Of a DNA stretch of 64,000 nucleotides, positions 31,077-60,101 are shown one piece after another. Origin of the DNA: Cyanophora paradoxa CCMP329 (Eukaryota; Plantae; Glaucophyta). The notes under the pieces are model-generated. The model was not told where the DNA came from and searched no databases. It saw only the letters and a list, made by a program, of their open reading frames with translations. Where the stretch lies: assembly GCA_004431415.1 (NCBI GenBank), contig QPMI01000412.1, forward strand, positions 62,001 to 126,000. Direction: 5' to 3'. Within the stretch, counting starts at the first letter, position 1; each line of letters begins with the position of its first letter. Both the position numbers and the translations under genes were made by a program.

Positions 31077-31313
31077 CCTCCCCTCCTTTCCCTGCCCTGG
31101 GGCTCGTCGCCCTTCATGGCCAGTGGATAGCTTGAAGCGGGGCGCCGCGGTTACACAGTCGGCGCCCCATAAAGTACACAGCGCGTTTCCGCGCTATCGC
31201 AGTGGGCATGCTCTCCCCTGCACCCCGTAATGTAAAGCAACGGAGAGCGGTTTGGTTCAGAACAGAAAGGGGCGCTGCCCGGCGAGGCGCACGGTGCGCG
31301 TGCGGGGCGGGGG

Positions 31314-34300: not shown

Positions 34301-34391
34301 TGGAGACGAGCTCGCCATCTTTCTCCGGCTCTGTGCCGACCGACAGCCCTGCACGCCCGCTGCTGCTTCGCTCCGCAGTGGACAGCGGCGG
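31314..34391 (-). pseudogene. 5'-truncated copy of the low-complexity SP/SxIP protein gene
   Basis: Same exons as 37440-40498, but it ends at the duplication junction and lacks the MGTVLSK start exons. Confidence 0.6.
33140..33660 (-). repeat. Coding 108-bp (36-aa) tandem repeat REPSPVKPAARRDPSAERSPAKPAVESSPAKPPVPK, about 4-5 units
   Basis: Visible in ORF 32627..34354 and repeated at ~39250-39770. Confidence 0.9.
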
Positions 34392-34433
34392 TGCGCCGCG
34401 CCGCCCGCCCGCCCGCCCGCCCGCGAGCCGTCG

Positions 34434-37204
34434 CCCGCGTCCGCGGTGTCCTCGAGCGGTGCGCCGCGCCGCCCGCCCGCCCGCCCGCCCGCCGGCCCAC
34501 GGCGCCGGCAGCTACTTCTGCTGGAGCGTGCACATGGAGGCGATCCTGCGCGACGTCGCCAGCGCGATGCCCTACGCCTCCCGCCAGCCGCCCCCCGCCG
34601 AGCCCCTCGCCTCCCCCTCCCGCGTGCGCCCCCGCCGTTCCCCGCCCCCCCCGCCCCCGCAGCGCCGACCGCGCCTCACATACGCCGGCCGGCCCGGCCC
34701 CCGCAGGTGTACATCGTGGGGGTCAGCACGGGCCAGACGCCGATCGCGTGCCGGCCGGTGGAGCGGGGGACGCCGCAGAAACGGCAGGAGCAGGCGTGCG
34801 AGCCGGCGGAGCTGCCGGAGGGCCTGCGCGCGAGCGGCAAGGAGGAGCTCCTCGTCTCGATCTCGGGGCAGCTCTGGGAGCTGATCGGGCGGGAGGGGGC
34901 CCTCCTCGACGCCTTCTGCGACCTCGCGCGGGAGCGCACGGAGCTGCGCGCCGCCATCGCGCGCCTGCAGGCCGAGCACGGCACGATCATGGCCCTCGTC
35001 GAGACGCTGCGGCGGGACTGCGAGGGCCTCGCCTCTCAGGCGCGGCGCATGCGGGAGGAGCGGGACGCGGCGCAGGACGAGCGGGCGCTGCTCGTCGCCG
35101 CGAACACGGACCTGCGCAAGGCCGCCGCCGCGCTGGAGAGCCGCAGCGCCTCGCTCGAGGCGCGCCTGATGGAGGGCGAGGCGGCCTCCCGCGGCGGGGC
35201 CGAGGCGGCGGCGCCGGGCGCCGCCGCCGCCGAAGCGGAGGCCCTCGAGCGCGCCCGCCGCCGCGCGGAGGAGGAGCGCACTGAGGCCCTGCAGAGGCGC
35301 GCCGCCCGCCCCGCCCCGCCCCGCGCGACGGCGGCGGCCTGACGCCGGGGCGCGGCGCGGCAGGCTGGAGCGGGCGCGGCGGGAGAGCGAGGAGCGCTCG
35401 CTGGAGATCCGGCGCCTGCGGGAGGAGCGCGAGACGGCGGGGCGGCGGGCGCAGGCGGCGGTGGAGGCGCGGCGGAGCCTGGCGGAGAAGCTCGACGCGG
35501 CGCAGCGGCAGGCGGACCAGCGGGCCGGCGGGCGGAGGAGCTGGAGGCGCGGCTGCGGCGGGCGGAGGAGGACCGGAGGGCGCTGGAGGCGGCGCTGGAG
35601 GAGCAGGCGGGGGAGCGGGAGCGGGCGCTGCGGGAGAAAGAGCGGGCGGAGGCGGCGCTGCGGCACCTGCGCGGCATCGCCACCAGCGCCTACAACGCCT
35701 CCCCCGACGTCTCCCCGCCCCGCTCCGTCTCCCCGCGCAAGCCCACCCACCGGGAGCGGGAGCGGGAGCTCCCGCCGGCCTGGGGGCCCTCCCTACCCCT
35801 CGACTGGTCCGAGCGCATCGCCAACACGAGCCCCAGCCGGCGCGCCCCGCCCCCTGCCCGCCGCGCTCCGCCCGCTGACGCGGCGCGCAGCGTCCGCTTC
35901 GCGTCGTCTTTGGCTGCCCCGCCGCAGGCCCCGGCGCCGCCTCCGCCGCCGCCGCCGCCGGCGCCGGCCCCGGCCCGGTCCCCGCAAGCAGCGCGTCGGC
36001 GGCGGCTGCTGCCCGCGACGCCGTGCTCGCCCTGCGCCGGTGCGCCGCGCCCCGCCGAGTCGCATCGCGGGTGCCGCCTGACGGGCCGCAGGGAGGAGGC
36101 CGCGCGCGCAGCCGAGGCGGCGCGCGCCGCGGAGACGGCCCGCGCGCTCGAGGCGGCGCGGGCGGAGGCGGCGCGCGCCGCGCAGGCGCCGCTGCCCGTG
36201 CCGGCGATCGCGTCGAAGTCGCGCGGGGTCGCCGGCTTCGTGCCCGCCCCGTCAGCGGCGGCCGCCACGGTGCGATCTGCCGCCCCTGCAGCCTCTCTCC
36301 CCCGCCGGCGGCGCGAGCGGCGGGGCCCCGCGCAGCTGCGGGGCTCGGGGTCGTACGTGTCGACGCGGATCTCGGCCCCCACGGCGGCGGCGGAGGAGGC
36401 GAAGGCATTCGTCCCATCGCCAACCGCCACGGCTCCTGCGTGCGCATGCGCCCGGGACGGGCCGCGCCCGGCCACCCCCGGCTCCGCGCCGAGCGTCGGG
36501 GCGGGCGCAGTGCTTCAAGACGAGCGGAGGGCGGAGGCGGCGCAGGCGTGCGTGGCGTGCGGGCGGGCGGGCTGCCAGGAGCTGGAGGGGCCCCGCCCCC
36601 GCGCGGCGCCGCCGGCCCGGCGCGAAGGCGGCCAGCGACGACGAGGCCTTCGCCGTGCGCCCCGCCCGCCCGTGCCGCCGGCCCCGCGCGGCCGGCCCGG
36701 CCGACGCCGGCGCGCGGGCGCAGTCGACGCGGCGGGAGGAGCGGACGCGGCGGAAGGTGAGCAACGAGATCGTCGCCGGCGCCGAGTACGCCGCCTACGC
36801 CCGCGAGGTGCGCGGGCGCGCGCGAGCGGGGCCCGTGGCCTGGCCCGCACCTCCTCACCTCACGCCACCCGGGCGGCAGTGGGCGCGCGAGGGGCGGCCT
36901 CGGCGCGGCGCGGGGCGTGGAGGGCGCGATGCTGGTGGAGGTCACGGGCGCGTCGCTCAAGCCGACGTCGACGATCGTCTCCCGAACCGCATCCTCTCCA
37001 ACCGTGCGGCCCGGCGAGGCGGCCCGGCAGAGGCGGGCCCTCGCTGAGCCGAGGGGCGGGGGCAGGGATCGAGGAGGTGAACTCGGCGCTGGCGAAGCTG
37101 GTGGCGAGCCCCACGCGGGCGCCCGTCGCGGGGCGCGCCTCGGCCTCCTCCACCTCCACCATCCCGACGAGATCTGGGGCATCCCCCGCTACCCCGGCCT
37201 CTAG
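34434..37204 (+). pseudogene. 5'-truncated, frameshifted copy of the coiled-coil gene
   Basis: Starts mid-exon at the junction and has multiple 1-nt indels relative to 28297-31076. Confidence 0.6.
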
Positions 37205-40200
37205 CCTCCCCTCCTTTCCCTGCCCTGGGGCTCGTCGCCCTTCATGGCCAGTGGATAGCTTGAAGCGGGCGCCGCGGTTACACAGTCGGCGCCCCATAAA
37301 GTACACAGCGCGTTTCCGCGCTATCGCAGTGGCATGCTCTCCCCTGCACCCCGTAATGTAAAGCAACGGAGAGCGGTTTGGTTCAGAACAGAAAGGGGCG
37401 CTGCCCGGCGAGGCGCACGGTGCGCGTGCGGGGCGGGGGCTAGCGCTTGGAGGAGGGGCGCGGGATGCGGCTCCCCGGCGTCGCGGCGGGCCCCGCCTTG
37501 GCGGCCCCAGACGGCGTCGCTGGCGTTCCGGGGGCGGCGGCGGCGGGCCGCGCGGCGGCGGGCGTGCTGGGGTCGCCGGCACGGAGGCGGCGGCGGAGGG
37601 GCGGGCGGGGTCGAGGGCGCCGGCGGGGCGGCGCCTGCGGGTCGAGTCGCTTCCTTCTTCGCAGGCGTCGCTGCCGGCGTCCGCCCCGCCAGTGGCGCGC
37701 GGGCGAGGCCGCCACCGCGGGGCCTTGCGCGTGGCCGCGGGCTCCCCGCCGGCGGGGCCAGAGCGGGCCGCGCGGCGGCCGGGGCGGGCCGCGCGGGGAG
37801 TAGGTGGGGATGCGGGAGCCGGGGAGGCCGGCTTGCCCGCGGGGACATCGGGAGAGGGAGGAGGGGAGGAGGGCCCCGAGGGACGGCGATGCGCCGCCCC
37901 GCGCGGGCGACGGTGGCGGCGGCCCCGGCGCCGACGGCGGCGAAGGCCGTCGCTGCGGCCTCGCCGATGGGCACGGGGGCCCAGCCGTCGGCGTACATCG
38001 GCGTGCACGCCCCCGAGCCGCCGGCAGAGCTTAGCTCCAGCGACCGCCGCATGTCTGCCGGCGGCTCAGGGGGCGGCGGGCGGGGAGCGGCGGGGCCGGC
38101 CGGCGCACCGAGCAGGGGCGTGTTGCTGCAGACAGAGGCAGTGGCCACCGAGGCCGGGCCGCTCGGGTAGTAGCCCATCCCCCTGGCGGCGGGTGAGGGG
38201 CGCCTGGCGGGGCGGGGCGGGGCGGGGCAGGGCGGACGCGGAGGCGAGCGGGGCCATGTCGGCCTCGGTGAGGGGCGCGCTGAGGTCGTCCTCGTCATCG
38301 GTGTGCGTCGGGGGCGGCCCCTCGTCGTCGTCGTCGCGGGCCTGCAGCAGGGCGCCCTGCAGCTCCGTCGAGCCGCACGACTCGCGGATGAAGCGCTCGT
38401 CGTCCGCCGTCAGGCCCCCGCTCAGGTCGTCCTCCAGCCCCGCCTCCGCCGGCGGCGGCGGCGACTCCGACCGCAGCAGCGGCGGCGGCCCGTCGCTCGG
38501 GCGCCACACGCCGGGCTCCTCCACCCCGAAGAGCTGCGAGGGGCTCAGGCGGGCCTTCAAAACGGGGCGGGGGCGGGCGCACGTCCTCTGGGGGCGGCGA
38601 GAGGGTGGTGCGGACGATGGTGCGGCCGCTGGCGGCGAAGGGGTCGCCGCTGGAGAGCATGCGGCGCTCGTCCTCGGTGAGGCCCGACCCGAGCAGCTCG
38701 TCGACGGAGCCAAGGGAGCGCCCCGAAGCCGACGCCACCGTCGGCATCAGCAGCGCCGGCCCTCGCTCGCCGTCCGCCCCAGCAGCGGCCCGGCGAGTCC
38801 GCCCCGGCCTTCGCAGGCGTCGCCTCCTCCTTGGCGCGGGGCGAGCGGGGGCGGGGAGCTGGGCGGCGGCGGTGTGGGCGAGCGCCGCGCGGGCGAGTCG
38901 CCGCGCGGGGAGGTCCTCGGGATGCGGCCCCGGGGAGACGCGGCCGGCCTGCGGGCCCGCGCGGGGCGACGCGCCCGGAGACGTCTTCTTCCGCCCGCCT
39001 CCTCCTCCGCCGCCGCCGCCGCCGCCGCCGCGAGGGCGGGGCCCAGCGGCGGGACCGGCGGGCGCGGGGGCAGGCCCGGGGCGAGACCATCGCATCGGGG
39101 CCGGCGGGCTCCGCGGCGGCACGCTCGGGCTCCGCATCCACGCGCTGCTTCTGAGGCGGGGGCTCCCGCGTCGGCGGGACTTCCTCGGCGGCGGCCTCGT
39201 CGCTCTCCCGCTGCCGCCGCTTCGCCGGCGATGCTGCAGCCGCCGAGGCGGCCGCCGGAGAGCGCTCGGCGCTCGGGTCCCGCCTCGCCGCCGGCTTGAC
39301 GGGCGACGGCTCGCGCTTCGGGACGGGGGGCTTGGCAGGAGTGCTCTCAACGGCCGGCTTGGCGGGAGAGCGCTCGGCGCTCGGGTCCCGCCTCGCCGCC
39401 GGCTTGGCGGGCGACGGCTCGCGCTTCGGGACGGGGGGCTTGGCAGGAGAGCTCTCAACGGCCGGCTTGGCGGGAGAGCGCTCGGCGCTCGGATCCCGCC
39501 TCGCCGCCGGCTTGACGGGCGAAGGCTCGCGCTTGGGACCGGGGCTTGGCAGGAGAGCTCTCGACGGCGGGCTTGGCGGGAGAGCGCTCGGCGCTCGGGT
39601 CCCGCCTCGCCGCCGGCTTGACGGGCGACGGCTCGCGCTTGGCGGCTGCAGGTTTGACCGGGAGCTCTCGACGGCGGCTTGGCGGAGAGCGCTCAGTGCT
39701 CGGATCGCGCTTGCCGGCGGACGGCGCGGCCGCGGGGAGCGTTCGGCCGACGGATCACGCTTCGACGCCTGCTTGGCGGGCGAGGCAACCTTCTTCTGCT
39801 TGTCGGGCGTCGCGGGCGGCTGCGGGGCAGGCTCGCTGTACGGCTCGAAGCTGTGCCCGGCGGCCTTGGCGGCGCCGGCGCTCTTCTTCTCCGCCTTCTT
39901 CTCCTTCTCCTTCTCCTTGGCGCCGGCCTTCTTCGCGGTCTCCTTCTTCTTTTCTGCGGGGGCGGCCCCGGGGGTGGCGTCCTCCTGGGCGGTGTCCTGG
40001 TGGCGGCCGTGCTTGGCCGGAAGCTCGGCGGACGAGCCGATGGAGGTGCTGGACGCCAGCGCTGGCGGCGACAAGCTGCGCTTCCGCTGGAGCAGCGGCT
40101 TGTCCTCCGCCTCCGAGCCCGCGTTCTCCTGCGCCTTCGAGCGTCGCGCCGCCGCCCGCTTCTTCGCCGAGTCGACGGCGGCCGGAACCACGCAGGCCGC

Positions 40201-43994: not shown

Positions 43995-45545
43995 CTAGTG
44001 GGAGTTCGGGGTGATCTCCGAGATCTTCACCCACCTGTGCTCGGCGGCGGACCTGACGCGCGGAGGAGCAATTAGGGAGCGGCTCGGCAAGAGAGGGATC
44101 TAGAGCAGCGCACTTGGCGGCGGCCATAGCCATGACGAGGGCCTTGCGGCCGTCGTCGCCAGAGCACTCGACGGGGGCGTCCTTCACGAGGCTGTTGAGG
44201 AACGAAATCGTCTCGTTCTTGTACGCCTCCGTGTACCTTCGCGCGGCACCGTCAGCCGCGGCCTGGCGCGCGGCGGGCTGTGTGCGGCCCGTACCGATCC
44301 ATGAAGAAGTTCAGGGGCAGGTCGCGCTTGAGCTTGTCCGCGCCCCAGTGGTGCACGTTGCTGGCGAAGTTGTTGTCCGACATGAGGGCGCCCGCAGTGC
44401 CGAACACCTCCGCGCGCTGGTCGTAGCCGTAGACCGCCTTGCGGCAGTTGTCGACGGTGACGGTCGCGCCGTTCTCGAAGCGGATGGTCGTCAGCGCAGT
44501 GTCGAAGCACAGCGGCGCTGCGGGCGCCGGGTCAGCGGGAGAGAAATGGAAAAGAAAGGAAACGCGGCTAGAGAGCGTATGCGAGAGCGCACCCGCGAGA
44601 TCCTTGATGCGCGGGTCAACCAGGTTGCTAGCGACAGCCATGATCTCAACAGGCTCGCTGCCGGTCAGGAAGCGGGACATATCGAAGTCGTGGATCGCCT
44701 AGCGCAAACAAGCATTAGCTAAGGAACCCAAGTGACGCGCGCGGGGACCAGGAGGGACTCGATTCGCGCGCACCATGTCCTTGAAGATGCCACCCGACTG
44801 CATGGTGTACTCGACCGGCGGCGGGCCCGGGTCGCGCGAGGTAAGACGAACGCTAATGACATTGCCAGCCTCGCCGGCGACGACGCCCTTCTTGATCCTG
44901 CGGTCGACGCAAACTCAATCACGTTATGACCTGCAGCTGACTAGAAACGCGCTGGCGCGGACAGCCGCGTAACCGCCGTTTTCGCGATGTACGTACCGAG
45001 CGAAGTTCGGGTCGAAACGGCGCTGGAACGCGAGGAAGAGCTTAACGCCGCACTGCTTGACGACACCGAGGGCCTCGTCGACACCAGCAAGATCGGTCGC
45101 GATGGGCTTCTCGACGAACTAAAGTGGCACGGGAATGTTAGAATGACCACGAAAACGCGCGAGGACAGCCCGAGCGGCGCGCTTAGCCCGGACCCAAACA
45201 TGTATGCGGCGCGCAGGCTTACCAGGTGCTTGCCCTTCTGGGCAGCCTCCTTGATAATCTGGGCGTGGGTGTCCGAAGGCGAGCAAACCCAGACCGCCTT
45301 GATGGACGGGTCGTTTAGGATCTCCTTGTAATCAGTCGTGTACTTGGGGATGCGGAAGTCCTCTGCAAGCTTCTTGCACGCGGCCTCGATGACATCGCTG
45401 ACGACGGCGAGATCCGCGAACGGCACGGCGGCCAGCGTCTCGGCGTGGACGCGGCCAATGCGGCCAGCGCCAATCAAGCCGACCTTGATGCCTGCCGACG
45501 CTCGTCAACGCGCGCAGACGACGGGCCAGGCATCGGCGCACTCAT
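43995..45545 (-). CDS. iolG: myo-inositol 2-dehydrogenase (Gfo/Idh/MocA family)
   Basis: GLIGAGRIG; VCSPSDTH; FVEKP; FQRRFDP; TSRDP; SGGIFKDMAIHDFD; YGYDQRAEVFG; FFMDRYTEAY. Confidence 0.9.
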
Positions 45546-45932
45546 GGCTGCTTGCGGGGCGGTCTGGGGCTGGGGCTGAACGGAGTTGACAGGCACGCCT
45601 GGGGTACGTTGCTCGCCGGCCCGCTTGGGTTCCTCGCTGGCTGCCCCTTCTAGCTTCCCTCCTGCAGAAGGGGAGCAACCCATCTGGCGCGCGGAAGCCG
45701 CGGCCAGAGCACGCGAAAGCTGACGTGCAATGCGTCGGCCGGAGGGGGGTTGCGCAAAATCCTCACGCCCGTAACGTCACGTGCGTCAACAGCGCGCGCG
45801 AGCGGCTGCGGCTACTGGTAGTAGCTACGGAGCACGATTCTGCTGCATTGCGACATCGCCTGCCGCAGCGTCGGCCGAGGCGCGCTCACAGCGGTTATGC
45901 GAGCGCTAGCGCTACTGGAGCCCGATCGGGGT

Positions 45933-48900
45933 TCAGGTGTAGGCCTCGTAGTTGGCGGTGTCGGTGCGGAGTGCGTAGCAGGAAATGGAGTCGAAGAGCC
46001 ATTTGTAGGTGACGATGTCCGCGGCCTCGAGCAGCTCCCGGGCGCCGGGCGGCAGGACGAAGAGACGCAGCAGCTCCTCGATGTCCACGACGCCCTCGGC
46101 CCGCACCGTCTCCGGCGACCGCACGACGTACGCGGCCCGCGCGGCAGTCGGCTCCAGGTCGCCTGCGGCGTCGGCGGCTCCGGGGATGCCTGCGCGCCGC
46201 AGGACGGTGCCGCCGGCGGCCTCGATCAGGTCGACGAGGTCGTTCCGCGTGGGGCCCCCGTCGTTGAACTCGCCCCACAGGCCGAACAGCAGCCCGGCGA
46301 AGAGCCGCGGCGCCTGCGCCCGGCGTCAGGCGGGCACGGAGGCGGCGGCGGCGAGGAACGGACTTCGGCGACGCGGTCGGCGCGGGAGCGGGCAGGCGCG
46401 TCGGTCCGCTGCTTGACGCTGTCGCCCAGCAGCTGGTAGCGCTCCTCGGGCTTCCAACAGTTTGCCTGGAGGCTCGCGCGGACCCCTGCGGCGCAGCGCC
46501 GAAATCAGCGCGAAGCGCTGGGGGGGGCGGGGCGGGGCGCGGATGGGGCGCACAGCCTTCGGATATGACCCAGGCGCCGCGGGCGACTCCAGCGAGGTAC
46601 TTGACAGTGCGCTTGCAGAGGCCGCCGAGCGTCTCGCGCGCCACCACGTGCGTCACCTCCTCGCTCCACGCCTCCGTCAGCTTCGCCCCGCCCAGCTTCG
46701 CCACCGCCCGCCCCAGCTCGCTCTGACGGCCCGTGAGCGGGCGAGGGAGGGGAGAGGGGTGCGCGCCCGGGGCGAGAGCACCCTCTGGCTCTCGTTCAGG
46801 CCGCTGGCGAGGATGACGCGCGTGACCGGCACCGGGTCGGCTTCCTTCCGGCCCGAGCGCCGCCCTGTGCGCGCGACATGTGTTGAGAACGGAATGAATG
46901 CATGTAAGAATGCCGAGGAGTACGCACCCGTGGAGGGGCGGGGTGCAGGGCTGGAGGATGATGACGCGGGGGAGGGGGCAGGGCGAGGCGCAGAGCTAGA
47001 TGCCGAAGGCGTCGCCGGCGGGGGAGGGCGGAAGCTAGGGCCAGGGGTGGACGAGGGTGACCGAAGGGGCGTCGGCTGGGACTTCTGGGAAGCCGAAGGA
47101 GGGCGGGGTGCGGGGGCGGAGAAGCGGGCAGAGGCCGGCGGGCTCGCGGCGGGGGTCTTCTGCTGCTTTCGGCTGCTGGAGGGGGCTGGGGCGCTGGCGC
47201 GGCGCGGGGTCGGTGCCGCGGAGCTGCAGCAGGAGCCGGCCTCGCTGCCGCTGCCGTCTTCGGCGGAGCTCCGCTGCGAGGGGCGCCGCCTCCCGCTCTC
47301 CTTGGCCTGCAGGCGCTCCACCTCTTGCTTGCCCAGCCCGCGGTGCTTCGGGCACTCAAGCACGTGCTCCGTCTGCGCTCGCGTTCGCCGGGGTCGCGGC
47401 AAGGGACGCGGGGGGACGGCGCTCACCTCGTACAAGGTGGTGCCGTCGTTCTGCTTGACGAGCTCGCGGGCGCACTGCAAGTGGAACTGCCGCTTGCACC
47501 GGCGGAGGAGGCAGCCGATGGCCGCCCCGCCCTCCCCGCACTTCTTGTAGCTGCACTTCTGCAGCGGGGCATGAGGGCCGACCGCGCGGGGGGACGGGGC
47601 GGGCGCACCAGGTTACGGGAGCGCCACCACTCTTCGTGGAGGTTAATGTACCCTCCGGTGCCGTCCTCCATCACGTCCGGGGCCCAGTCCGCGCATTGCT
47701 CGTGCACGTAGAGGCCCCGGACCGTCCCCTGCGGACCGCCGTCAGCAGAAGGCCGGGGTAGCAGTGGGGCGGCGGCGCGCCTTCTTCTGCCGGTTGGGGA
47801 TCGCGTAGGGGCCGATGCCGTCGCCGCAGGGGTCCGCCGGCTCGCCCTCCCGCGGGAGCTGCCGGTTGCAGAAGCCGCACTTCTTCACGATCTTGGGGGT
47901 CGCCCGGCCGGGGCTCTGCCGGCCCAGCCGCGGGTCGGCGGGGACCGTCTCTTCGTCCTGCAGGTCCTCGTCGCTGTGGACCGAGTCGCTCAGGCCGCCG
48001 CCGTCGACGCTGGCGAACATGAGGAAGGCGCTCTCGTAGTGCTTGACGGCGCCGGCCCAGCACGCCTCCGGGCAGGCGTCGAAGCGGCGGGTGAAGCCCT
48101 GCTTGCGGAAGAACTTGGTCGCCGTGAGGTCCGCGAAGGTCACCAGCCAGCAGATCCCCTCCTGCCCCGCCTCCTCCCTGCCCCGCCGTTGGCGGGGGTC
48201 GAAGGCGGGGAGGGGCCGCGGGAGGGGCCGGACCGGAGGGCGGTGAGGAGGCGGGAGCCGACACCTCGCTTCTGGATGGCGTCGCTGACGACGAGGAACG
48301 TGATCTCAGCGATGCGGCGCTCCTCCCGCGGCATGGGCTTGTACACCGCCGCCCCCTGCAGCACCCCGCCCGGCCCCACGTCCAGGAGGCTCCGGTGGAA
48401 CCTGCGGGGCGGTGAGGCGGGGCGCGGCGGGCCGGCCCCCAGGCGGGGCGCACGGGTCGGCGATGACGCCGTCCACGTAGGGCTTGGACATCTCCGGGAG
48501 GACGGAGATGACGAGTTCGGAGAGCGCGTCGGTGTACTTTATCCTGTCCGCGCCCTGCAGGTCCCCCAGCCGAACGTAGCCCTCCACCGGCACCGGCGCG
48601 AGCGCGAAGGGAGGCACGCCGCCCGCCGGCGAGGCCGAGGAGGAGGCGGGGGCGGAGGCGCGGGAGGTGGTCGAGGCGGTGGCTGTGGGCGGACCGGCGG
48701 ACTTCGAGGTCGTGCTGGCGGCTTCTAGGACCTCGCCCCCGCCGGCTCCCGCCTCGATCTTCTTCGGCGTCGCGGAGAAGAGGCCGGGGACGCCGCACGG
48801 CTGCAGCGGATCCCGCCGGGCCGGCGAGGGCGACAGGCACGCCGCGCCGCTCCGGGCTTTCTTCATGGGCCGCTTGTTCGGCGACTCGTGCGCCGAAGGG

Positions 48901-50695
48901 CCGCCAACGAGCGGCGCGATGTTCTCCTTGTCGGGCAGGTCCCGGGGCGGGTCCCGTGGGCGGGCGGCGTGGGGCGGCGGAACGGGGCGGGCCGGAACGA
49001 GAGGCGGGGCCGGGGGGCAGGAGAGAGGCCCGCCGAGGGCCTCGATGACGGAGTGGGAGAGGAAGGGGGCGGCGTCGGGGATGGCGCTGCGGACCGCGGT
49101 CCGGATGCTCTCCACCTGCGAAGGCCGCAGCTCTGCGGGTGGGGTCAGCCGAGGGCGCCGCAGGGGAGGCGGGCGGCCCGCACGGTTCGCGATGATGTCG
49201 GCGCCAGCGTCGACCGCGGCGGCCACAGCCTCGGCAGCCCGCGGTACGTCCTGCGCGCCGCCGAGGGCCGCATCGCGCGCGGCGGCACGGCCGGCCTCAA
49301 AGCCCGAGGGGGCGACCGTTGCGTCTTCGTCCAGATCCATTTCGTGCTGCTCGCCGCCGCCGGCCGGCGCCTCCTCGCCGCTCTGCGGCTCGATGGCCGC
49401 ACCGCCGGGGGCCTCCCACGCCGGATCCCATGCTGGCTCCTCTGCAGCCTGCGCTTGCTCGTCCCCGGCGTAAGGATCCTCGAGGCCTGCAGAAATGGCT
49501 TAGCTGCAGTGTGGCGCACTACTTGAAGGAAGGGGGAAGAAGCACCTCCAGCGGGGGCCTCAGCATACAGCTCGGGCGCAGCGGCCTCGGGATCTGCCAT
49601 CTCGATATCTGCCGCCGGCTCGCCCTCGTCGACTCTCCGCAACGGTGATGCAGGTGGCATGAGGGGCCTGGGCGGACGCCGCGTGCTGGGGGAGCGGGGC
49701 CGGCGGCGGGGCGGAGAGGGTATGGAGCAGTTGACGGAGTCGAAGTAGATAGCGTCGGGACGGTGGTAAGGTTGAGCCAAGAGCGCCGACATGGCCTCCC
49801 GCGCTGTCAGCGCTTTCTGCTGTTCGGGCGGGACCGACCCCTCCCCCGGCGACGCGTCTTCGATGTCGTCGACTGTCTCGTGCTGATGCCCGCGGCGGGC
49901 TGCCGGCCGCTCCGGCTGAGCGTGCGGAGCGGGCGCAGGCACGGCTGCTGGAGCGGTCTCTCCTCGCGCTGCTGGAGAATGGCTCTGGCGCGCGTCTGGC
50001 AAGGCCGGCAGCTGCGGGGCGTTGGCCGCCGATGATGGCTTCTGCCGCGCGTGCCGGCGACCGGGCGCATCCTGCGAAGGATCTTCCACATCCTCGACCT
50101 CGTCTTGATCACGGCCGACGGACAGCCTGTTCAACGAGCTCGGCTCCCCTGATCGGATTCGATCAACTCCGGGTCGAGGCTACTGGGCGATTTTGAATGC
50201 GCACCGGCGGAGGCTTCCCCTTCCAGCAGTGCGCGGCCTTTGACCACATTCTCGAGGTGCAAGAAGGCGTCCACGAGGTCCCGATAGCGCTGCACGGCAT
50301 GGAGGGAGCGGCGATCGAACTCGCCCTTGCAGCTGCGGAAGGGGAATGGGCAAACAGGCATTAGGGATCATACATTCGATCCATTCGAAGTGACGGCGCA
50401 CTTCGGGCACTTCAGCTTGTTGCGCTGCAGCGGACACTTCTTGATGCACTCCCTGCGCGGGCCGTCGGGCACGAGAAGAGGGCAGCATTCTATTCCAGGT
50501 GACATCCGCACGCACGCGCAAAAGAAGTGGTTGCAGGGCAAGGCGAGAGGGTCGTCGACGACATCTTGACTGCGGCGGCCGAGCTCGGAAAAAGGCGCTG
50601 GGAGCGGGGAGCGCTCGATCGCACCAGATAGTGCAATGCAATTCCTGTCGGAAACCGTCCAGCGCCCGCTGCAGCGTGGCGTCCTCGGGCTTCAT
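45933..50695 (-). CDS. BRCA1/BARD1-like protein: C3HC4 RING, GCN5-type GNAT, extended PHD, two BRCT domains
   Basis: RING: CTIC..CNHFFCAEC..CPNC. GNAT: LPEMSKPYV..IAEITFL..QKRGVG..TFAD..FFRKQGF. ePHD: CGFC..HEQC..C..C..GC..CKRQFHLQCA..CPKH. BRCT: SGL..VTHVV..CKRTVKYLAGVARGAWVIS and WLFDSISCY. Confidence 0.88.
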
Positions 50696-51321
50696 CGCCG
50701 CAGTTCAAAAAAGCGCCGCCAGCCGCGAGCCGGCTGCTCGGGGGCGGTCCTACGATCGCTGCAATCGCTGCAGATTGACTTTGGAGCGCCGCGGAGCGCC
50801 GCTGGCTCCGTTCTTGCCGGCCGCGGGGGGTACGGGTAGCACAGGTCCACACACAAGCAGATCGACCTGCGCCACATGTACGTCCACTCAAGCGCGGCAC
50901 AGGCCGCGGCGCAATCGCCGATTCGCAAAGCGGCTCCCAAACAGCATCGGCGCGCGCGGCGCGGCTCGTTTGCGCGCGCGCGCGCGCGTGCCCAGGGCCC
51001 GCCCTCGAGCTCGAGCTCGACAGCTATAGCAATTTTATCATGATCGCATACAAACCAGCGATCGTGGCGCCGGTGCCCGGCCTAGGCCTGGCAGAACTGC
51101 ACGTCCCGCGATCGAAAGACGTCGACAGGTGGCGGTTTAAAGGTAGCGGTACAAGGTGCAGAGCTAAGCTAAGCCGACTATTAAACTATTGATACTACTG
51201 CCAGTCTGCTGGCACAAAAAGAAGCAGAATATCAGAGCAGGCTATGCATGCTAAGCAGCGAATTGATCAAAATACCGCGAGCGCCAAGACAAAAAGCAGC
51301 GGCGATCTGAGGAAACCGAGG

Positions 51322-55500: not shown

Positions 55501-58500
55501 GCCGCTGGGCCCGTCGGACCTCTTCGACAGCCTGTACATCGCGGAGGTGGCGCCCCCGAAGGCCACCGCCCCCCTCCCCGTCGACCGCCTCGAAATGCGT
55601 GCGTCAGCCCCCGCCCCGCCCCGCGCCGGCCCCGGGGCGGAGGGTGACGGGGCGGGGCGGCAGGGGAGCTGGGCCTGCAGGAGCGGCGGGTGCGGGCGGG
55701 GTACCTGCTGCGGGGGGCGGCGGTGGAGCGGCAGGCGGCGCTGGAGGAGCTGGCGCACAAGCAGCGCATCTGGGGCGCCATGGAGCTCGAGGTCGAGGGC
55801 CTGCGCGCCGGCCGCGACCGCGACGCGCGCCTCATCGCCGCCCTCACCGCCGACCTCGACGAGGCGCGGCGCGCGCTGGAGGCCTCGCGGGCGGAGGGTG
55901 CCGACGTTCGGGCCGAGCTGCGGCGGGTGCGGGAGACGAGCGCGGAGGCGCTGCTGGACGCGCACCGCGAGGGCGAGCTGCTGCGGCGCGAGATCTCGGA
56001 GCGCATCGAGGCGCTCGCCAAGGCGGAAGGGGACCTCTCGCGGGCCCGCGCCGCCCTCCAGCAGCGCGACGCCCTCGTCCGCTCCCTCGAGGAGCGCATC
56101 GTCTCAGCCCGCCGCGAGGCCGAGGCCGAGGCCGCCTCGCTGCGCTCCGAGATGGAGAAGCAGGAGGCCGCCCTCACCGCCCGCATGGAGGGCGCCATGG
56201 GCGAGCTCCGCACCGCCCTCGAGGACGCCACCGCCGAGGCCCGCGCCGCCGCCGCCCGCGCCGAGGCGGCGAGCGAGGCCGCCGGGGCGCTGGAGGCGGA
56301 GCTGGGGGAGGCGAGGGAGGCGGGGCGGGCGGAGGAGGCGCGTGCGGCCGGGCTGGAGCGGGAGGCGGCGGTGCTGCGGGTGGACCTCGCGGAGGCGCGG
56401 GAGCAGCTGCGAGCGGCGCGGGAGGAGGCGGCGAACGCGCGGGCGCGGGCCGACAAGGCGGAGGCCGACCTCGAGGCGCTCCACGCGGAGGCCGCCGAGG
56501 CCGCCGAGCGCGCCGCCGCCGCCCTCCACGCCGCCCACCTCGTCCGCCCGCCCGCCCCGCCCGCCCCGCCGTGCTGCCGGGCCCGACGCCGCGCCGCAGG
56601 AGATGCAGGAGCTCGAGGCGGAGAACGCGCGCGCCGTGGCCTCGAGCCGGGGCCGCCGGCCCTCCAACGCCGGCGCGAGCGCCCAGGGCCACCGCAAGCT
56701 GAGCGCCGCGGGAGAGCCGCACGGGCGGCGCAAGTCGCAGCACGCCGGCAGCGGGCAGCGCTCGCGGGCGCCCTCGATCTCGATCGACGCGTCGCCCGGG
56801 GAGGGGCCCCGAGCCCGCTTCCGGGACGCTGCGGCCGCCGAGCACGGAGGCGCCGCGGCGGCGGGGCTCGCGGGAGGTGCCGGGCGGGGCCGGCGGGCGT
56901 CGGAGGCGATCGGGGATGCCCTGGCGCACTTTGAAGCGATGAAGGCGGCGGCCGCGCAGCACGCCGCCGCCTCGCCCGACGAGGGCCCCGACGCCGAGCT
57001 CAGCAGCAGCCTCCACAGCGGCGGCCGCCTCGGCACCGCCCCGACCCGCGCGGGCCGGCGGCCGGCGGGCCGGCAGCCGCGGCGGGGGCAGCCTGCGGTC
57101 GCTGGGGCAGCTGGGGCGGGGCGCGCGGGCGGCGGCGGCGGGCGGCGGGGAGGCGGACCTGGCGCGGCAGCTGCTGGAGGCCCTCGACCACGCCGTCGCC
57201 GGCAGCGACGACGAGGGCGACGGCGAGGGCGAGGGCGCCGCCAGGGAGGCCCCGGCCAGCGCCCCGGCGAGCGCCCCGGCGAGCGGCCTGGCGGAGTCGA
57301 TGTCCCGCGGGCGGCGGCTGCAGCAGCGGCGGCGGAGTGCCAGCGCTCGGGCCGGAGCCGGCCTCGGCGGAGGGACGCGGCCGAGCAGCGAGGCGGGGCC
57401 GCGCGCGGCGGCGGCGGGGCCGGCGGGAGGGCGAGGCGGGGCGGGCGAGGGCGGCGAAGAAGAAGGACCGGATGGGCCTGCTGGAGCTGGCGAAGCGCCT
57501 CGGGAGGCCCTCGAGGTGGAGCGCCGCATGCGCGAGGAGGCCGAGGAGTGCGTGGAGGGGATGCGCGCCGAGGTCCAGCGCGAGCGCGACCGCCGCGCCG
57601 CCGACCTCGCCGCCGCCGCCGCGCGGCCGCCTCGCCCGAGGGCTCGGAGGCGACCCCGGAGGAGCGGGTGCGGCTGGTGCGGGCGCACCAGGACGCCCTG
57701 CGCGAGGCCGAGGAGGCGTCCCGCGAGGCCGAGGCGGCGCGCGACGAGGCCGAGGCCCAGCGGCGCGCCCGCGAGCTCCTGGAGCAGGAGCTCGTGCAGC
57801 TGCGGGCGCAGCTGGCGGCCCTGCGGGAGCAGGCGGAGGCGGAGGAGGAGGAGCGCATCCGCTGGGAGGCCGAGCAGCGCGAGCGCATGCGCGCCCTCGT
57901 CCAGGGCGGCGGGGCGGCCCCCGACGCGCCCCCCGCCGAGTCCCCCGGCGGCCTCCGCCCGCCCTCGGGGGGCAAGGACAAGGGCAAGGCGGCCGCCTCG
58001 CCGCGCAAGCGGCCCTCCCTCCTCTCCGTCATCGAGGCGGCCGCCGCCACCTCGCCGCGGAGGCAGCAGCCGCCCCCGTCCCCGGCGGGGCCGCCGGCGC
58101 TGCGGCGGCGGCGGCGCTGGAGGGCGGGTGGAGGCGCTGGAGGGGCGGCTCGGGGCGCTGCTGGGGAGGGCCTCTTCGAGGACGCGCGCTCCCGCGAGCT
58201 CGCCGAGCGGCTGCGGCTGCTCGAGGACCTCGCCGCCCTCGACGCCGCCGACGCCGCCGCCCCCTCCCCCGCCGCCGCCCCGCCCCTCCCCGCGGAGCCC
58301 CGGCGGGGCCGCCCCGCCCCTGGGGGCGGCCGAGCGGGCGCGGCGCGTGCTGGGGATCTTCCGGCGGGAGATGCGGGGCGACCTGCGGCGCGCCTCCCTG
58401 CAGGTCGCCCTCGGCTCGGCGCCCCCTCGCGGCCGCCCTCGGGCCACGCCTCGGCACCCTCGGCGGGGACGGCGCCGCCCGGGGTGCGCTCGCAGGCGTG

Positions 58501-59074
58501 GCTGGGCCGCACGCTGCACGCCATCTACGAGGAGAAGCTCCTCGCCGACCTCGCCGCCTACCGCGCCGGGCCCGGCGCCCCCGTCGAGCCCCTCGCCTGC
58601 GCCGTCCTCGACTGGGCGCAGCGCCGCTACGGCCTGCGGGCCCTCGTGGAGGCGGCCATCGGGGAGCTCGCGCGCGCCGTCGGGCACCACCGCGCGGCCG
58701 CCCCGAGGCGGCCGCCTTCGCCGCCTTCCTCGAGGGGGCGCGGCGCGGGCGCAGCACCTCACCTTCTACCTCACCTGCCGCGCCATGATCTTCGCCCCGG
58801 GGCCCGCCGCCGCCCTCGCAGCCCCGGGCACGGCGGCCCCCGCGGCCCCGGCCCGTTCCTGCCCGGCGAGGCGGGGCGGCGGCAGGTGCCGCTCGCCTTC
58901 GCGCTGGACGTGGCGGCGAAGGCGCTGGAGGGGCCGGCCCGAGGCGGTGGAGCGGGCGGCGGGGCGGCTGCGGGGCGAGGCGGGGCCGGAGGGGGCGCTG
59001 AAGGCGAGCGCGCTGCTGGCGTCGCTGGTGGAGGAGTTCGGGCGGCCCTCGAGGCCTTCGAGGCCCGCGCCGAG

Positions 59075-59109
<35 letters not shown>

Positions 59110-60101
59110 GCGCAGGGCGGCCTCGACTTCGCCGCCTTCGGGCGGCTCGTGCGGCGGCTCCTGCCGGGCTGGCCCGAGGCGGCCGCCCGGCGGCTCTTCG
59201 AGGAGGCGGGCGGGCGGAGGGCCGCCCCTGCCCTCCCCGCCTTCCGCGCCCTCCGCGCCTCCCGCCACTTCTTCATGCAGCGCCTCGCCACGCCGGCCCT
59301 CCTCCGCGACCTCGCCGCCGTCGCCCCCGCCCCGCCCCGCCGGGGCCCCGACGAGGGCGGCCCCGCGGGGACCGCGAGCGCGACCGCGAGCGCGACGCGC
59401 GCGTGACCATCGCCGAGGGCTCGGGCGGCGAGGAGCCCTCGAGCAGCGACGGCGAGCGCTCGCCCCGGCAGCGCCGCCGCGCCCCGCGCCCCTCCGAGAA
59501 GCAGCAGCAGCAGCAGCAGCAGGGCCGCCGGGCGCGCGGCCGGCGGGGTGGAACGTGCACGGGCACCCGAGCGCGAGCTCGATCCCGGCGGGAGCGGCGG
59601 CGCCGGCGCCCGACACCCGGCGGAACTGGACGCTCTCGGTGGCGGACCTGCTCGCGGCCGGGCCGCGGCGGGGCGCGGGCGCGGGGCGGGGACCCCGCGT
59701 CGGCGTCGACGCCGGCGCTGCGGGAGGCGACGGTGGAGGTGGCGGTGGGCGCCCTCGTGCCCCCGCGCCCCTCGAGAAGGTCCTCGGCATGGTCGCGAGC
59801 CACTGGGCCGGCGTCCGCGACGTCGCCTTCTGGAAGAACTGGCAGGTCAAGCTCGAGAAGACCGCCGCCGCCTCCGCCGCCCCGCGCCGCCGCCGCAGCC
59901 CGCCCGCGCCGAGGCCGTCACGGCGGCCTTCGCCGCGCAGAGGCCGGCGGGGGCCCGTCGGTGCGGCGCGGGCGGCCGCCGATCGCGCCCCTGATGCTCC
60001 CCGCCGAGGCGCACGCCGCCGCCCTCGCCCAGCAGCGCGCCGCCTCCCCGCACGTCGCCTCCGCCGCCTCCCTGCCCCGCGGCTGGGAGGCCGACCCCTG
60101 A
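52581..60101 (+). CDS. Large coiled-coil protein with TSNAXIP1-like domains; hosts the snoRNA clusters
   Basis: RLRIYLVCMEQLSAEFKIYGPLLSIIK|REF resembles the TSNAXIP1 N-terminal domain. Later WLGRTLHAIYEEKL..DWAQRRYGLRALVE. The 3' half has apparent indel errors. Confidence 0.65.
53362..53452 (+). ncRNA. Intronic box C/D snoRNA, copy 1
   Basis: C box ATGATGA 53371-53377; D' ATGA 53395; hairpin tcggc/gccga; C' CGATGA; D CTGA 53440-53443. Guide ATTCCCTTTCGA is antisense to the LSU rRNA motif UCGAAAGGGAAU (recalled). Confidence 0.8.
53540..53636 (+). ncRNA. Intronic box C/D snoRNA, copy 2
   Basis: CTGATGA 53552-53558; same D' guide and hairpin as copy 1; CTGA 53621-53624; terminal stem gcgcgttg/cgacgcgc. 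Confidence 0.8.
54751..55426 (+). ncRNA. Intronic tandem array of five complete and one truncated box C/D snoRNA-like units
   Basis: AGGATGA..CTGA units at 54761-54843, 54945-55027, 55070-55151, 55193-55276 and 55335-55416, each with its own complementary terminal stem. D guide TATGTCTGGACC is antisense to SSU rRNA GGUCCAGACAUA (recalled). Confidence 0.8.

What the first reader, a model, noticed from the sequence alone, without database searches (positions are those of the whole stretch)
48010..48545. BRCA1/BARD1-like protein with a built-in GCN5-type acetyltransferase
Seen: between the RING and the ePHD, three exons splice in frame to LSELVISVLPEMSKPYVDGVIADPFHRSLL..AAVYKPMPREERRIAEITFLVVSDAIQKRGVGSRLLTALREEAGQEGICWLVTFADLTATKFFRKQGFTRR..WAGAVKHYESAFLM. 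The last of these exons continues without a stop into the PHD. Known: GCN5 HATs read LPxMPKEYI..FAEIVFCA..QVxGYG..LTYAD..YFKKQGF..W.GYIKDYEG..LM, so the catalytic Glu and the QxxGxG CoA motif are retained. Plant BRCA1/BARD1 are RING-PHD-BRCTx2 with no HAT that I know of. Inference: one polypeptide combining ubiquitin ligase, acetyltransferase, histone reader and phospho-reader for chromatin at DNA breaks.
Basis: partly seen in the sequence, partly recalled or inferred. Interest (0 to 1): 0.85.

Follow-up and report, generated by a model that had tools for sequence, protein, structure and literature searches.

The report
BRCA1-like protein with built-in acetyltransferase
A gene of the glaucophyte alga Cyanophora paradoxa encodes a BRCA1/BARD1-type DNA-repair ubiquitin ligase with a complete GCN5-type histone acetyltransferase domain in its middle, a combination I found in no other organism and in no paper.

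Summary
On the minus strand, three exons (49132-48454, 48401-48234, 48177-47781) encode a complete GCN5/PCAF-type acetyltransferase core. The catalytic Glu and the Q-x-x-G-x-G CoA motif are kept. Spliced RNA contigs from three runs remove exactly the predicted introns, and the DNA run is collinear with the genome.

The third exon runs on into the first zinc knuckle of an extended PHD, so HAT and PHD cannot be separate genes. The window is Cyanophora paradoxa (a glaucophyte, not a plant). The locus matches the public but unnamed gene model tig00020560_g11090.t1 (1247 aa): BRCA1-type RING, linker with an NLS-like motif, HAT, ePHD and tandem BRCT.

A paralog on another contig has the same layout, and the HAT is among its best-conserved parts (59% identity). 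No other protein with this architecture turned up in 1.84 billion cluster representatives, in metagenome contigs or in the literature.

Caveats:
- No listed RNA contig piece bridges the RING part to the HAT part; the listed pieces leave 48935-49183 uncovered, inside a conserved open frame.
- Two BRCT-region introns are retained in the RNA contigs.
- Enzyme activity and a role at DNA breaks are inferred.
- Plants have a separate GNAT+BRCT protein (BCP2) whose relationship to this gene is untested.

Verdict: a new variant of a known kind.

The parts
45933..50695 (-). Whole coding region. It has 17 exons and matches the public model tig00020560_g11090.t1 of Cyanophora paradoxa (P0001, 1247 aa).
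   Evidence: 1243 of 1247 residues of P0001 are read exactly from the window; the other 4 are split codons. Searches identify the protein and the organism.
50203..50695 (-). Exons 1-4: C3HC4 RING with flanking helices (aa 1-102).
   Evidence: Pfam RING families at aa 18-65. The best solved relative is the human BRCA1 RING, E 1.9e-11, aligned over BRCA1 residues 6-83 including both flanking helices. Introns at about 50333-50401 and 50452-50514 are removed in RNA contigs.
49185..50146 (-). Exons 5-7: acidic, low-complexity linker (aa 103-349). The model's intron 49901-50062 is not spliced in the RNA contigs; it is in frame and would add 54 aa.
   Evidence: exon map. X1 record 2 is contiguous over 49545-50147 and X4 record 15 over 49622-50149; the frame stays open.
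48454..49132 (-). Exon 8: linker with motifs conserved in the paralog, then the N-terminal segment of the HAT. The motifs include the NLS-like SPNKRPMKKAR at 48852-48884. The HAT segment starts at 48524 and includes LPEMSKPYV.
   Evidence: the paralog P0002 aligns to 49127-48453.
48234..48401 (-). Exon 9: HAT beta-strands plus motif A. Catalytic Glu608 is at 48305-48307 and QKRGVG at 48257-48274.
   Evidence: Pfam Acetyltransf_1, 25.3 bits on this exon alone. Weak alignment to yeast Gcn5 residues 59-96 (E 0.11). Invariant columns of alignment A1. Coordinates. Both flanking introns are spliced in RNA.
47781..48177 (-). Exon 10: HAT motif B and the GCN5-specific C-terminal segment (to about 48009), a linker, and the first zinc knuckle of the ePHD (CGFC at 47868-47879).
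   Evidence: PDB hits to GCN5/KAT2A/PCAF residues 103-151, E 2.5e-5. Translation. Coordinates.
47729..47780 (-). GC-AG intron (52 nt) inside the ePHD coding region.
   Evidence: The sequence has no GT donor there. The RNA joint 47727->47780 is seen in X1, X4 and X7.
47343..47728 (-). Exons 11, 12 and the start of exon 13: the rest of the extended PHD (zf-HC5HC2H, aa 765-858).
   Evidence: Pfam PF13771, 33.3 bits against a cut-off of 29.1 on P0001. Exon 12 alone gives E 1.8e-5. Introns 47559-47608 and 47373-47426 are removed in RNA.
46928..47342 (-). The rest of exon 13: Ser/Pro/Ala-rich linker.
45933..46864 (-). Exons 14-17: tandem BRCT (aa about 1001-1247). The phosphopeptide-pocket residues S-G (46797-46811) and T-x-K (46597-46614) are kept.
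   Evidence: Pfam BRCT 50.5 bits and BRCT_2 33.1 bits. The best solved relatives are BARD1 (8.8e-17) and BRCA1 (1e-14). Coordinates. Introns 46865-46927 and 46486-46553 are spliced. Introns 46723-46781 and 46314-46363 are retained in some or all RNA contigs.

Best explanation
This is one real, expressed nuclear gene of Cyanophora paradoxa. It encodes a BRCA1/BARD1-family protein of about 1250-1300 aa into which a complete GCN5/PCAF-type histone acetyltransferase core has been built, between the RING-proximal linker and the ePHD.

Shown here:
- The exon structure and the splicing of the exons I checked.
- The domain order RING - NLS-like linker - HAT - ePHD - tandem BRCT.
- Retention of the catalytic Glu, of the CoA-binding Q/R-x-x-G-x-G motif and of the GCN5-specific N- and C-terminal segments.
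- A paralog in the same genome with the same layout.

Inferred mechanism:
- The tandem BRCT (phospho-Ser pocket kept) and the ePHD (a histone-tail reader in plant BARD1) bring the protein to damaged or otherwise marked chromatin.
- The RING, probably paired with the paralog's RING as in BRCA1-BARD1, ubiquitylates histone H2A.
- The tethered HAT acetylates nearby histone H3 tails, or repair factors, using acetyl-CoA.
- One polypeptide would therefore both read and write two chromatin marks at the same nucleosome.

My odds: single gene with this architecture about 0.9; HAT catalytically active about 0.65; role in the DNA-damage chromatin response about 0.5.
For: - Per-exon Pfam and PDB hits to GNAT and GCN5.
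- RNA contigs from three runs in two studies remove the introns around and within the HAT and ePHD. One contig (X1 record 1) joins HAT, ePHD and BRCT exons, and another (X1 record 2) joins the RING exons to 49184.
- The public model P0001 equals the spliced window product.
- Pfam on P0001 finds RING, Acetyltransf_1, zf-HC5HC2H, BRCT and BRCT_2, all above their cut-offs.
- Solved relatives: RING to BRCA1 at 1.9e-11; BRCT to BARD1 and BRCA1 at 1e-16 to 1e-14; HAT to yeast, Tetrahymena and human GCN5/PCAF at 4e-16 over 135 residues.
- The HAT model (pLDDT 82.8) superposes on GCN5/PCAF at TM 0.82-0.85. The 43 best PDB matches are all GCN5/PCAF; other GNATs reach at most 0.68.
- Invariant E608, G622, G624 and the LP..Y, AD and QGF columns in the alignment with GCN5s.
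- The paralog P0002 has the same architecture. Its HAT is 59% identical, equal to the best-conserved domain.
- Linker motifs between the two RNA contigs are conserved in the paralog.
Against: - No listed RNA contig piece spans from the RING part to the HAT part. X1 record 1 starts at 48934. X1 record 2 is listed down to 49184 and has 175 more letters whose placement was not shown.
- The model's BRCT-region introns are retained in contigs: 46723-46781 in all three RNA runs and 46314-46363 in two. The retained forms would stop before or inside the BRCTs.
- No bromodomain and no Ada2-binding region are present. Canonical GCN5 needs partner proteins for full nucleosome activity (established knowledge).
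- No enzyme assay exists.
- The RING-RING complex prediction gave no verdict.
- Orthology to plant BRCA1/BARD1 could not be tested by a tree, because the searches did not return the plant sequences.
Confidence: 0.7

Rival explanations
1. The locus mainly produces shorter products rather than the four-function protein. These could be a RING-less HAT-ePHD-BRCT protein from an internal start near 48900-49130, or a BRCT-less RING-HAT-ePHD protein from transcripts that retain the 59-nt intron 46723-46781.
For: RNA contig ends lie at 48934 (X1), 48918 (X7) and 48718 (X4). In X1 the mean contig depth is 192 for the 3' contig against 8 for the RING contig. Intron 46723-46781 is retained in the contigs of all three RNA runs, and 46314-46363 in two of three. 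Retention brings a stop after about 34 codons. An in-frame Met lies in KRPMKK at about 48866.
Against: Contig ends are not transcript ends. In X4 and X7 the HAT/ePHD contigs and the RING contigs have similar depth (about 3-8). X1's depth of 192 is a mean over a contig that runs into a highly expressed downstream neighbour. All bins between 48749 and 49340 have coverage in all three RNA runs. The stretch between the contigs is an open frame with motifs conserved in the paralog. The spliced form restores an uninterrupted BRCT alignment to human BARD1. Logan contigs cannot give isoform proportions.
Confidence: 0.15
2. The HAT domain is not a histone acetyltransferase in this setting. It could be a pseudo-enzyme or acetyl-CoA sensor that regulates the E3. 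It could also acetylate non-histone targets, such as the protein itself, its paralog or repair factors like RAD51.
For: There is no bromodomain and no Ada2/Ada3-binding region. The HAT is only 26-33% identical to the canonical GCN5 HATs compared. PCAF acetylates RAD51 in human HR repair (PMC12373954, abstract seen).
Against: The catalytic Glu, motif A, motif B and the GCN5-specific substrate-cleft segments (LPxMxKxY.; W.G.(I/V)K.Y) are kept in both paralogs. The domain is among the most conserved parts of the paralog pair. It sits next to a histone-tail reader domain.
Confidence: 0.2
3. The protein is not a functional BRCA1/BARD1 equivalent. It would be a lineage-specific chromatin or transcription regulator related to plant BCP2 (GNAT + tandem BRCT) that acquired a RING and an ePHD, or the ancestor from which BCP2 derives. 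It would act mainly in gene regulation, as reported for the PHD of Arabidopsis BARD1/ROW1.
For: A 644-aa Streptophyta cluster with tandem BRCT domains, probably BCP2, is the nearest cluster by language-model features to P0002:274-932 (score 0.83). It also holds a domain that superposes on the HAT model at TM 0.78. BCP2 is described as GNAT + tandem BRCT of unknown function (PMC9791218, PMC11014961). The ROW1 PHD binds H3K4me3 and represses WOX5 (PMC4316744).
Against: The RING matches BRCA1 better than any other solved RING, including the flanking helices. The BRCTs match BARD1 and BRCA1 8-10 orders of magnitude better than microcephalin, TOPBP1 or MDC1. RING-ePHD-BRCTx2 is the plant BRCA1/BARD1 layout (PMC4316744, PMC4009792). 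The atlas scores are below the level the tool calls reliable. The identity of that cluster with BCP2 was not verified.
Confidence: 0.15

Closest known systems
Plant BRCA1 and BARD1/ROW1 (Arabidopsis At4g21070, At1g04020)
   Same: N-terminal RING, a PHD-type zinc finger in the middle and two C-terminal BRCT domains. There are two paralogs per genome. The papers describe a PHD absent from animal BRCA1 (PMC4009792) and RING + PHD + two BRCT in ROW1/BARD1 (PMC4316744).
   Different: The plant proteins are not described with an acetyltransferase domain. Here a 140-residue GCN5-type HAT core sits directly upstream of the ePHD and shares an exon with it. Orthology was not tested by a tree.
Human BRCA1-BARD1
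   Same: The RING with flanking helices is most similar to the BRCA1 RING (E 1.9e-11). The tandem BRCTs are most similar to BARD1 and BRCA1 (E 1e-16 to 1e-14), with the S-G and T-x-K pocket residues kept.
   Different: The human proteins have no ePHD and no HAT, and BARD1 has ankyrin repeats instead. In animals, acetyltransferases act with BRCA1 as separate proteins.
GCN5/KAT2A/PCAF histone acetyltransferases
   Same: The whole HAT core matches: sequence E 4e-16 over 135 residues and fold TM 0.82-0.85. The catalytic Glu, motifs A and B, and the GCN5-specific N- and C-terminal segments are present.
   Different: There is no bromodomain, no PCAF_N domain and no Ada2-binding region. Identity to the GCN5 HATs compared is only 26-33%. 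The domain is embedded in a RING/BRCT protein.
Arabidopsis BCP2 (AT2G41450), GNAT + tandem BRCT
   Same: An acetyltransferase fold and tandem BRCT domains lie in one polypeptide within Archaeplastida. BCP2 was pulled down with the gamma-H2A.X reader XIP/BCP4 together with RAD51 (PMC9792525). A probable BCP2 cluster holds a GCN5-like fold (TM 0.78).
   Different: No RING or PHD is reported for BCP2 (PMC9791218). Its function is unknown. The sequence relationship to this HAT was not tested.

Membership tests
BRCA1/BARD1 family (plant-type) | N-terminal C3HC4 RING flanked by helices | tested here: met
   Pfam RING families at aa 18-65. The best PDB match is the BRCA1 RING, over residues 6-83 including both helices, E 1.9e-11.
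BRCA1/BARD1 family (plant-type) | C-terminal tandem BRCT with phospho-Ser pocket residues (S-G ... T-x-K) | tested here: met
   BRCT and BRCT_2 are above Pfam's cut-offs. BARD1 and BRCA1 are the best solved relatives. LASGL and KRTVKY align to the pocket positions. In the paralog P0002 the pocket is partly changed (S-C, T-x-R).
BRCA1/BARD1 family (plant-type) | PHD-type zinc finger between RING and BRCT | tested here: met
   zf-HC5HC2H scores 33.3 bits against a cut-off of 29.1. Literature for the plant proteins: PMC4009792, PMC4316744.
BRCA1/BARD1 family (plant-type) | RING-RING heterodimer with a paralogous partner | tested here: inconclusive
   A paralog exists (P0002). The complex prediction gave no verdict. 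The N-terminus of the P0002 model lacks the first C-x-x-C pair, which looks like a gene-model error.
BRCA1/BARD1 family (plant-type) | Grouping with BRCA1/BARD1 in a phylogeny | not tested
   Three word-index searches returned only the two Cyanophora proteins, so there were no plant sequences for a tree.
BRCA1/BARD1 family (plant-type) | E3 ubiquitin ligase activity on histone H2A | not testable with these tools
   This needs a biochemical assay.
GCN5/KAT2 histone acetyltransferases | GNAT core with CoA-binding motif A (Q/R-x-x-G-x-G/A) | tested here: met
   QKRGVG at aa 619-624 and RRRGIG in the paralog. G83 and G85 are invariant in alignment A1. Acetyltransf_1 scores 39.7-43.9 bits.
GCN5/KAT2 histone acetyltransferases | Catalytic general-base Glu (yeast Gcn5 E173) | tested here: met
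   AEITF aligns to the yeast sequence FAEIVF. E69 of alignment A1 is invariant, which is Glu608.
GCN5/KAT2 histone acetyltransferases | GCN5-specific N- and C-terminal segments that form the histone-binding cleft, and the GCN5 fold | tested here: met
   LPEMSKPYV and W.GAVKHYE align to LPKMPKEYI and W.GYIKDYE. The 43 best Foldseek matches are all GCN5/PCAF at TM 0.82-0.85. The model was built from an alignment that includes GCN5s, so it leans towards them.
GCN5/KAT2 histone acetyltransferases | C-terminal bromodomain and Ada2-binding region (canonical full-length GCN5) | tested here: not met
   No bromodomain hit in P0001 or P0002, and an ePHD follows the HAT. I therefore file only the domain under GCN5-type; the protein is not a GCN5 ortholog.
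GCN5/KAT2 histone acetyltransferases | Acetyl-CoA binding and histone acetylation | not testable with these tools
   This needs a biochemical assay.
Plant BCP2 (GNAT + tandem BRCT) | Acetyltransferase fold N-terminal to tandem BRCT, with no other domains | tested here: not met
   HAT and tandem BRCT are present, but so are a RING and an ePHD. BCP2 is described as having GNAT as its only non-BRCT domain (PMC9791218).
Plant BCP2 (GNAT + tandem BRCT) | Sequence relationship between the two acetyltransferase domains | not tested
   There are only fold and feature leads to an unnamed Streptophyta cluster.

The most novel reading that the evidence does not exclude
The two HAT-bearing paralogs form a BRCA1-BARD1-like heterodimer that is a self-contained chromatin writer-reader. 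It would couple H2A ubiquitylation to H3 acetylation on the same nucleosome, in a lineage reported to lack SQEF-type H2A.X (PMC11014961). This RING-HAT-ePHD-BRCT layout would be the ancestral Archaeplastida state. Plant BRCA1/BARD1 (RING-ePHD-BRCT) and plant BCP2 (GNAT-BRCT) would then be its fission or loss products.
Probability: 0.15. Interest if true: 0.8.

Novelty: new variant of a known kind. Interest (0 to 1): 0.6.

Why it matters
BRCA1-BARD1 and GCN5/PCAF-type acetyltransferases both act on chromatin during homologous recombination, but as separate proteins. A natural fusion, kept in two paralogs, is 'Rosetta-stone' evidence that the two activities work on the same substrate at the same place.

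The fusion also offers a compact system for asking how H2A ubiquitylation and H3 acetylation are coordinated. It may clarify the origin and function of the uncharacterised plant GNAT-BRCT protein BCP2. Finally, it may show how a lineage said to lack canonical H2A.X marks broken chromatin.

Its reach is limited for now: it is seen in one species and nothing has been tested at the bench.

Tried and rejected
- **Word-index protein searches.** I ran them with the HAT, ePHD-BRCT and ePHD regions. Each returned only P0001 and P0002. The index was swamped by low-complexity words or found few candidates. This says little about distant kin, and it left no plant BRCA1/BARD1 or Cyanophora GCN5 sequences for trees.
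- **Metagenome scans.** Two scans with HAT+ePHD and ePHD alignments found no relative.
- **Exact look-up.** The look-up of encoding contigs for P0001 found nothing on record.
- **P0005.** This 99-aa hit was followed as a possible second fusion. It is an exon of an ordinary GCN5 gene with a bromodomain exon downstream.
- **IDM1 lead.** The atlas feature search suggested an IDM1-type acetyltransferase. I rejected it: there is no IDM1_C hit even at E 10, and the sequence and fold matches are to GCN5.
- **RING-RING complex.** The prediction for P0001:1-105 with P0002:1-100 gave no verdict and is not evidence either way.
- **Full-length tblastn.** P0001 against the window was dominated by low-complexity noise. 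I replaced it with exact exon mapping.
- **Cause of the contig break.** I looked for repeats inside the window that could explain the break near 48934. There are no shared 18-mers.
- **Assigning the paralogs.** I could not say which is 'BRCA1' and which is 'BARD1'. The P0001 RING is closest to BRCA1 but its BRCTs are closest to BARD1, while the P0002 BRCTs are closest to BRCA1.
- **Joined spliced sequence.** I built and sent none of my own. The window was searched exon by exon by reference. Whole-protein analyses used the stored public protein P0001.
Full report
**What is at the coordinates**

The window is very GC-rich (0.62-0.83) and has short introns. The feature lies on the minus strand.
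- Exon 8 ends at 48454. The HAT starts at 48524 with LSELV.
- Exon 9 is 48401-48234.
- Exon 10 is 48177-47781.

The introns between them, 48402-48453 and 48178-48233, have GT..AG ends. Exon 10 continues without a stop through the end of the acetyltransferase and a short linker. It then runs into CGFC...(intron)...VHEQC, the first zinc knuckle of an extended PHD.

**Exon-by-exon searches (by reference)**

Exon 9 alone passes Pfam's curated cut-off for Acetyltransf_1 (25.3 bits against 20.7), and exon 12 alone hits zf-HC5HC2H. Against solved structures:
- Exon 9 aligns weakly to yeast Gcn5 residues 59-96 (best E 0.11).
- Exon 10 aligns to Tetrahymena, yeast and human GCN5/PCAF residues 103-151, with E 2.5e-5.
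- Exon 8's last 65 codons have no hit on their own.

The two matches are collinear and are to GCN5-family HATs.

**Transcript evidence**

I laid four public runs on 45400-51300. Runs X1, X4 and X7 come from two studies and hold 56-73% of the sampled words. Their contigs are spliced. X12, which holds 93% of the words, is collinear with the genome and serves as the DNA control.

Every intron I had predicted around and inside the HAT and ePHD is removed in the RNA-like contigs:

| Intron (window) | Length | Note |
|---|---|---|
| 48402-48453 | 52 nt | between exons 8 and 9 |
| 48178-48233 | 56 nt | between exons 9 and 10 |
| 47729-47780 | 52 nt | GC-AG intron |
| 47559-47608 | 50 nt | inside the ePHD |
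| 47373-47426 | 54 nt | inside the ePHD |
| 46865-46927 | 63 nt | before the BRCT exons |
| 46486-46553 | 68 nt | inside the BRCT region |
| about 50333-50401 | about 69 nt | RING exons |
| about 50452-50514 | about 63 nt | RING exons |

One contig, X1 record 1 (3732 nt), joins the HAT exons, the ePHD and the BRCT region. Another, X1 record 2 (1509 nt), joins the RING exons and the linker down to 49184. It has 175 more letters whose placement the table did not list.

There are three caveats:
- **No listed contig piece bridges the two halves.** The listed pieces leave 48935-49183 uncovered. If record 2's unlisted 175 letters continue across the 49133-49183 intron, only about 25 bases (about 48935-48958) remain unbridged. 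All three RNA runs have depth in every bin across that stretch. The frame is open, and its motifs are conserved in the paralog: (V/I)R.AVRSA..AAP(F/L)L, (D/E)KEN and SPNKRP.KKAR.
- **One model intron is not spliced.** The public model's intron 49901-50062 is kept in the contigs. It is in frame and would add 54 residues.
- **Two BRCT-region introns are retained.** Intron 46723-46781 is retained in the contigs of all three RNA runs, and 46314-46363 in two of three. The retained forms would stop before or within the BRCTs. The spliced form gives an uninterrupted BRCT alignment to human BARD1, so the intron is real. Contigs cannot tell how much of each form exists.

**Identity of the gene and organism**

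I searched exon 10 with HMMER against 1.84 billion cluster representatives. Only two proteins had E below 1e-10:
- P0001, 1247 aa, 301 bits.
- P0002, 932 aa, 71 bits.

Both are EukProt entries of Cyanophora paradoxa, tig00020560_g11090.t1 and tig00000903_g5527.t1. Both are unnamed singleton clusters.

Exact mapping shows that P0001 is the gene model of this locus. 1243 of its 1247 residues are read from the window in 17 exons between 50695 and 45936, and the other four are split codons. I built and sent no joined sequence of my own. Whole-protein analyses used this stored public protein.

**Domain architecture**

Pfam hits on P0001:

| Domain | Residues | Score |
|---|---|---|
| RING | 18-65 | several families above their cut-offs |
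| Acetyltransf_1 | 576-660 | 39.7 bits |
| zf-HC5HC2H | 773-858 | 33.3 bits |
| BRCT | 1014-1086 | 50.5 bits |
| BRCT_2 | 1125-1237 | 33.1 bits |

P0002 has the same HAT, ePHD and BRCT hits and the distal two-thirds of the RING. Its model lacks the first C-x-x-C pair. In P0001 that pair lies at the end of exon 1, so the P0002 gap is probably a gene-model error.

Against solved structures:
- The P0001 RING is closest to the human BRCA1 RING (E 1.9e-11), including both flanking helices. It scores about 10 bits above TRIM25, the next hit, and about 14 bits above RNF168.
- Its BRCTs are closest to BARD1 (8.8e-17) and BRCA1 (1e-14), far ahead of microcephalin, TOPBP1 and MDC1.
- The P0002 BRCTs are closest to BRCA1.
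- The S-G and T-x-K phosphopeptide-pocket residues are present in P0001.

**Is the HAT really GCN5-type and intact?**

P0001:540-870 matches yeast, Tetrahymena and human GCN5/PCAF HAT domains at E 4e-16 to 4e-14 over about 135 residues. That is nearly the whole crystallised core.

In an alignment with five GCN5-family HATs, several columns are invariant: the catalytic Glu (Glu608, window 48305-48307), both glycines of the CoA motif (QKRGVG, 48257-48274), and the LP..Y, AD and QGF columns.

A model of aa 540-705 (pLDDT 82.8) superposes on GCN5/KAT2A/PCAF crystal structures at TM 0.82-0.85 and rmsd 1.0-2.2 Å. The 43 best PDB matches are all GCN5/PCAF, and other GNATs reach at most TM 0.68. The ESM-Atlas fold search gives the same picture. 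The model's input alignment contained GCN5s, so it leans towards them.

There is no bromodomain and no IDM1_C hit. Identity to the GCN5s compared is 26-33%. That is about as far as these divergent protist GCN5s are from each other (31-41%). The domain is therefore a divergent family member and not a recent copy of a canonical GCN5.

Between the two paralogs the HAT is 59% identical. That equals the best-conserved domain and is above the RING (46%) and BRCT1 (43%). This pattern argues for purifying selection on the HAT.

**Distribution and prior knowledge**

None of the following turned up another protein with this architecture:
- the exhaustive HMMER search;
- three word-index searches;
- two metagenome scans;
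- the atlas searches.

These searches have limited reach for distant relatives, and I could not search other glaucophytes specifically.

Full-text searches found no paper linking Cyanophora with BRCA1/BARD1, and none describing a BRCA1/BARD1 with an acetyltransferase domain. A survey of acetylation enzymes in photosynthetic eukaryotes that included Cyanophora reports no such domain combination (PMC5499015).

The closest published relatives are:
- **Plant BRCA1 and BARD1/ROW1.** They have RING, PHD and two BRCTs, and the ROW1 PHD binds H3K4me3 (PMC4009792, PMC4316744).
- **Arabidopsis BCP2 (AT2G41450).** It has a GNAT domain plus tandem BRCT and its function is unknown (PMC9791218, PMC11014961). 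It was pulled down with the gamma-H2A.X reader XIP and RAD51 (PMC9792525).

A 644-aa Streptophyta cluster with tandem BRCTs, probably BCP2, is the nearest cluster to P0002's C-terminal two-thirds by language-model features (0.83, below the reliable range). It contains a domain that superposes on the HAT model at TM 0.78. This is a lead to a possible common origin, not a result.

**Mechanism**

Shown:
- One reading frame with RING, NLS-like motif, intact GCN5-type HAT, ePHD and tandem BRCT.
- The gene is expressed and spliced.
- It is duplicated, with the HAT conserved in both copies.

Inferred from established knowledge of the families:
- The BRCTs bind phospho-proteins and the ePHD binds a histone tail.
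- The RING pair ubiquitylates H2A.
- The tethered HAT acetylates H3 tails or repair factors nearby.

PMC11014961 reports that glaucophytes lack SQEF-type H2A.X. I give this as context only.

**Verdict**

The observation and the architectural interpretation hold. This is a new variant of a known kind: a BRCA1/BARD1-family protein with an inserted GCN5-type HAT. It is present in public data only as two unnamed gene models of one species. Its activity and its role are still to be tested.

Noticed in passing
window 46723-46781 and 46314-46363 (minus strand): Two short introns inside the BRCT-coding region are retained in RNA contigs: the first in all three runs, the second in two of three. Neighbouring introns of the same contigs are spliced. 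Retention would truncate the protein before or within the BRCTs, so this may be regulated intron retention.
   Followed up: partly
window 47729-47780 (minus strand): A 52-nt intron with a GC donor (GC-AG) lies inside the ePHD coding region. Spliced contigs of three runs confirm it.
   Followed up: yes
window 49901-50062 (minus strand): The public gene model removes a 162-nt 'intron' here. The RNA contigs of X1 and X4 are contiguous across it and it is in frame, so the real protein is probably 54 residues longer than the model.
   Followed up: partly
P0002 (tig00000903_g5527.t1; another contig of the same genome): The paralog's model lacks three things that P0001 has: the first C-x-x-C of the RING, the C-x-x-C knuckle before the ePHD, and part of BRCT2. 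These look like gene-model errors.
   Followed up: no
P0006 / P0013 (JGI metagenome contig; a member from Bigelowiella natans): A 927-aa protein combines an ePHD (97-163), a GCN5-type HAT (698-808) and a chromo/Tudor-knot domain (876-917). It is another case of the GCN5 HAT core joined to chromatin-reader domains other than a bromodomain.
   Followed up: no
window 45400-45600 (minus strand): A much more highly expressed gene lies just downstream, with contig depth 384-998 against 3-25 and an intron at about 45491-45540. RNA contigs run from the BRCT exons into it, so the two genes' transcripts overlap or read through.
   Followed up: no
window 28000-40000 and 56000-60000: These blocks are 78-83% G+C. 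Their translations give many weak low-complexity (Ala/Pro/Ser/Arg-rich) matches to the linkers of P0001. They seem to be repetitive, extremely GC-rich sequence.
   Followed up: no
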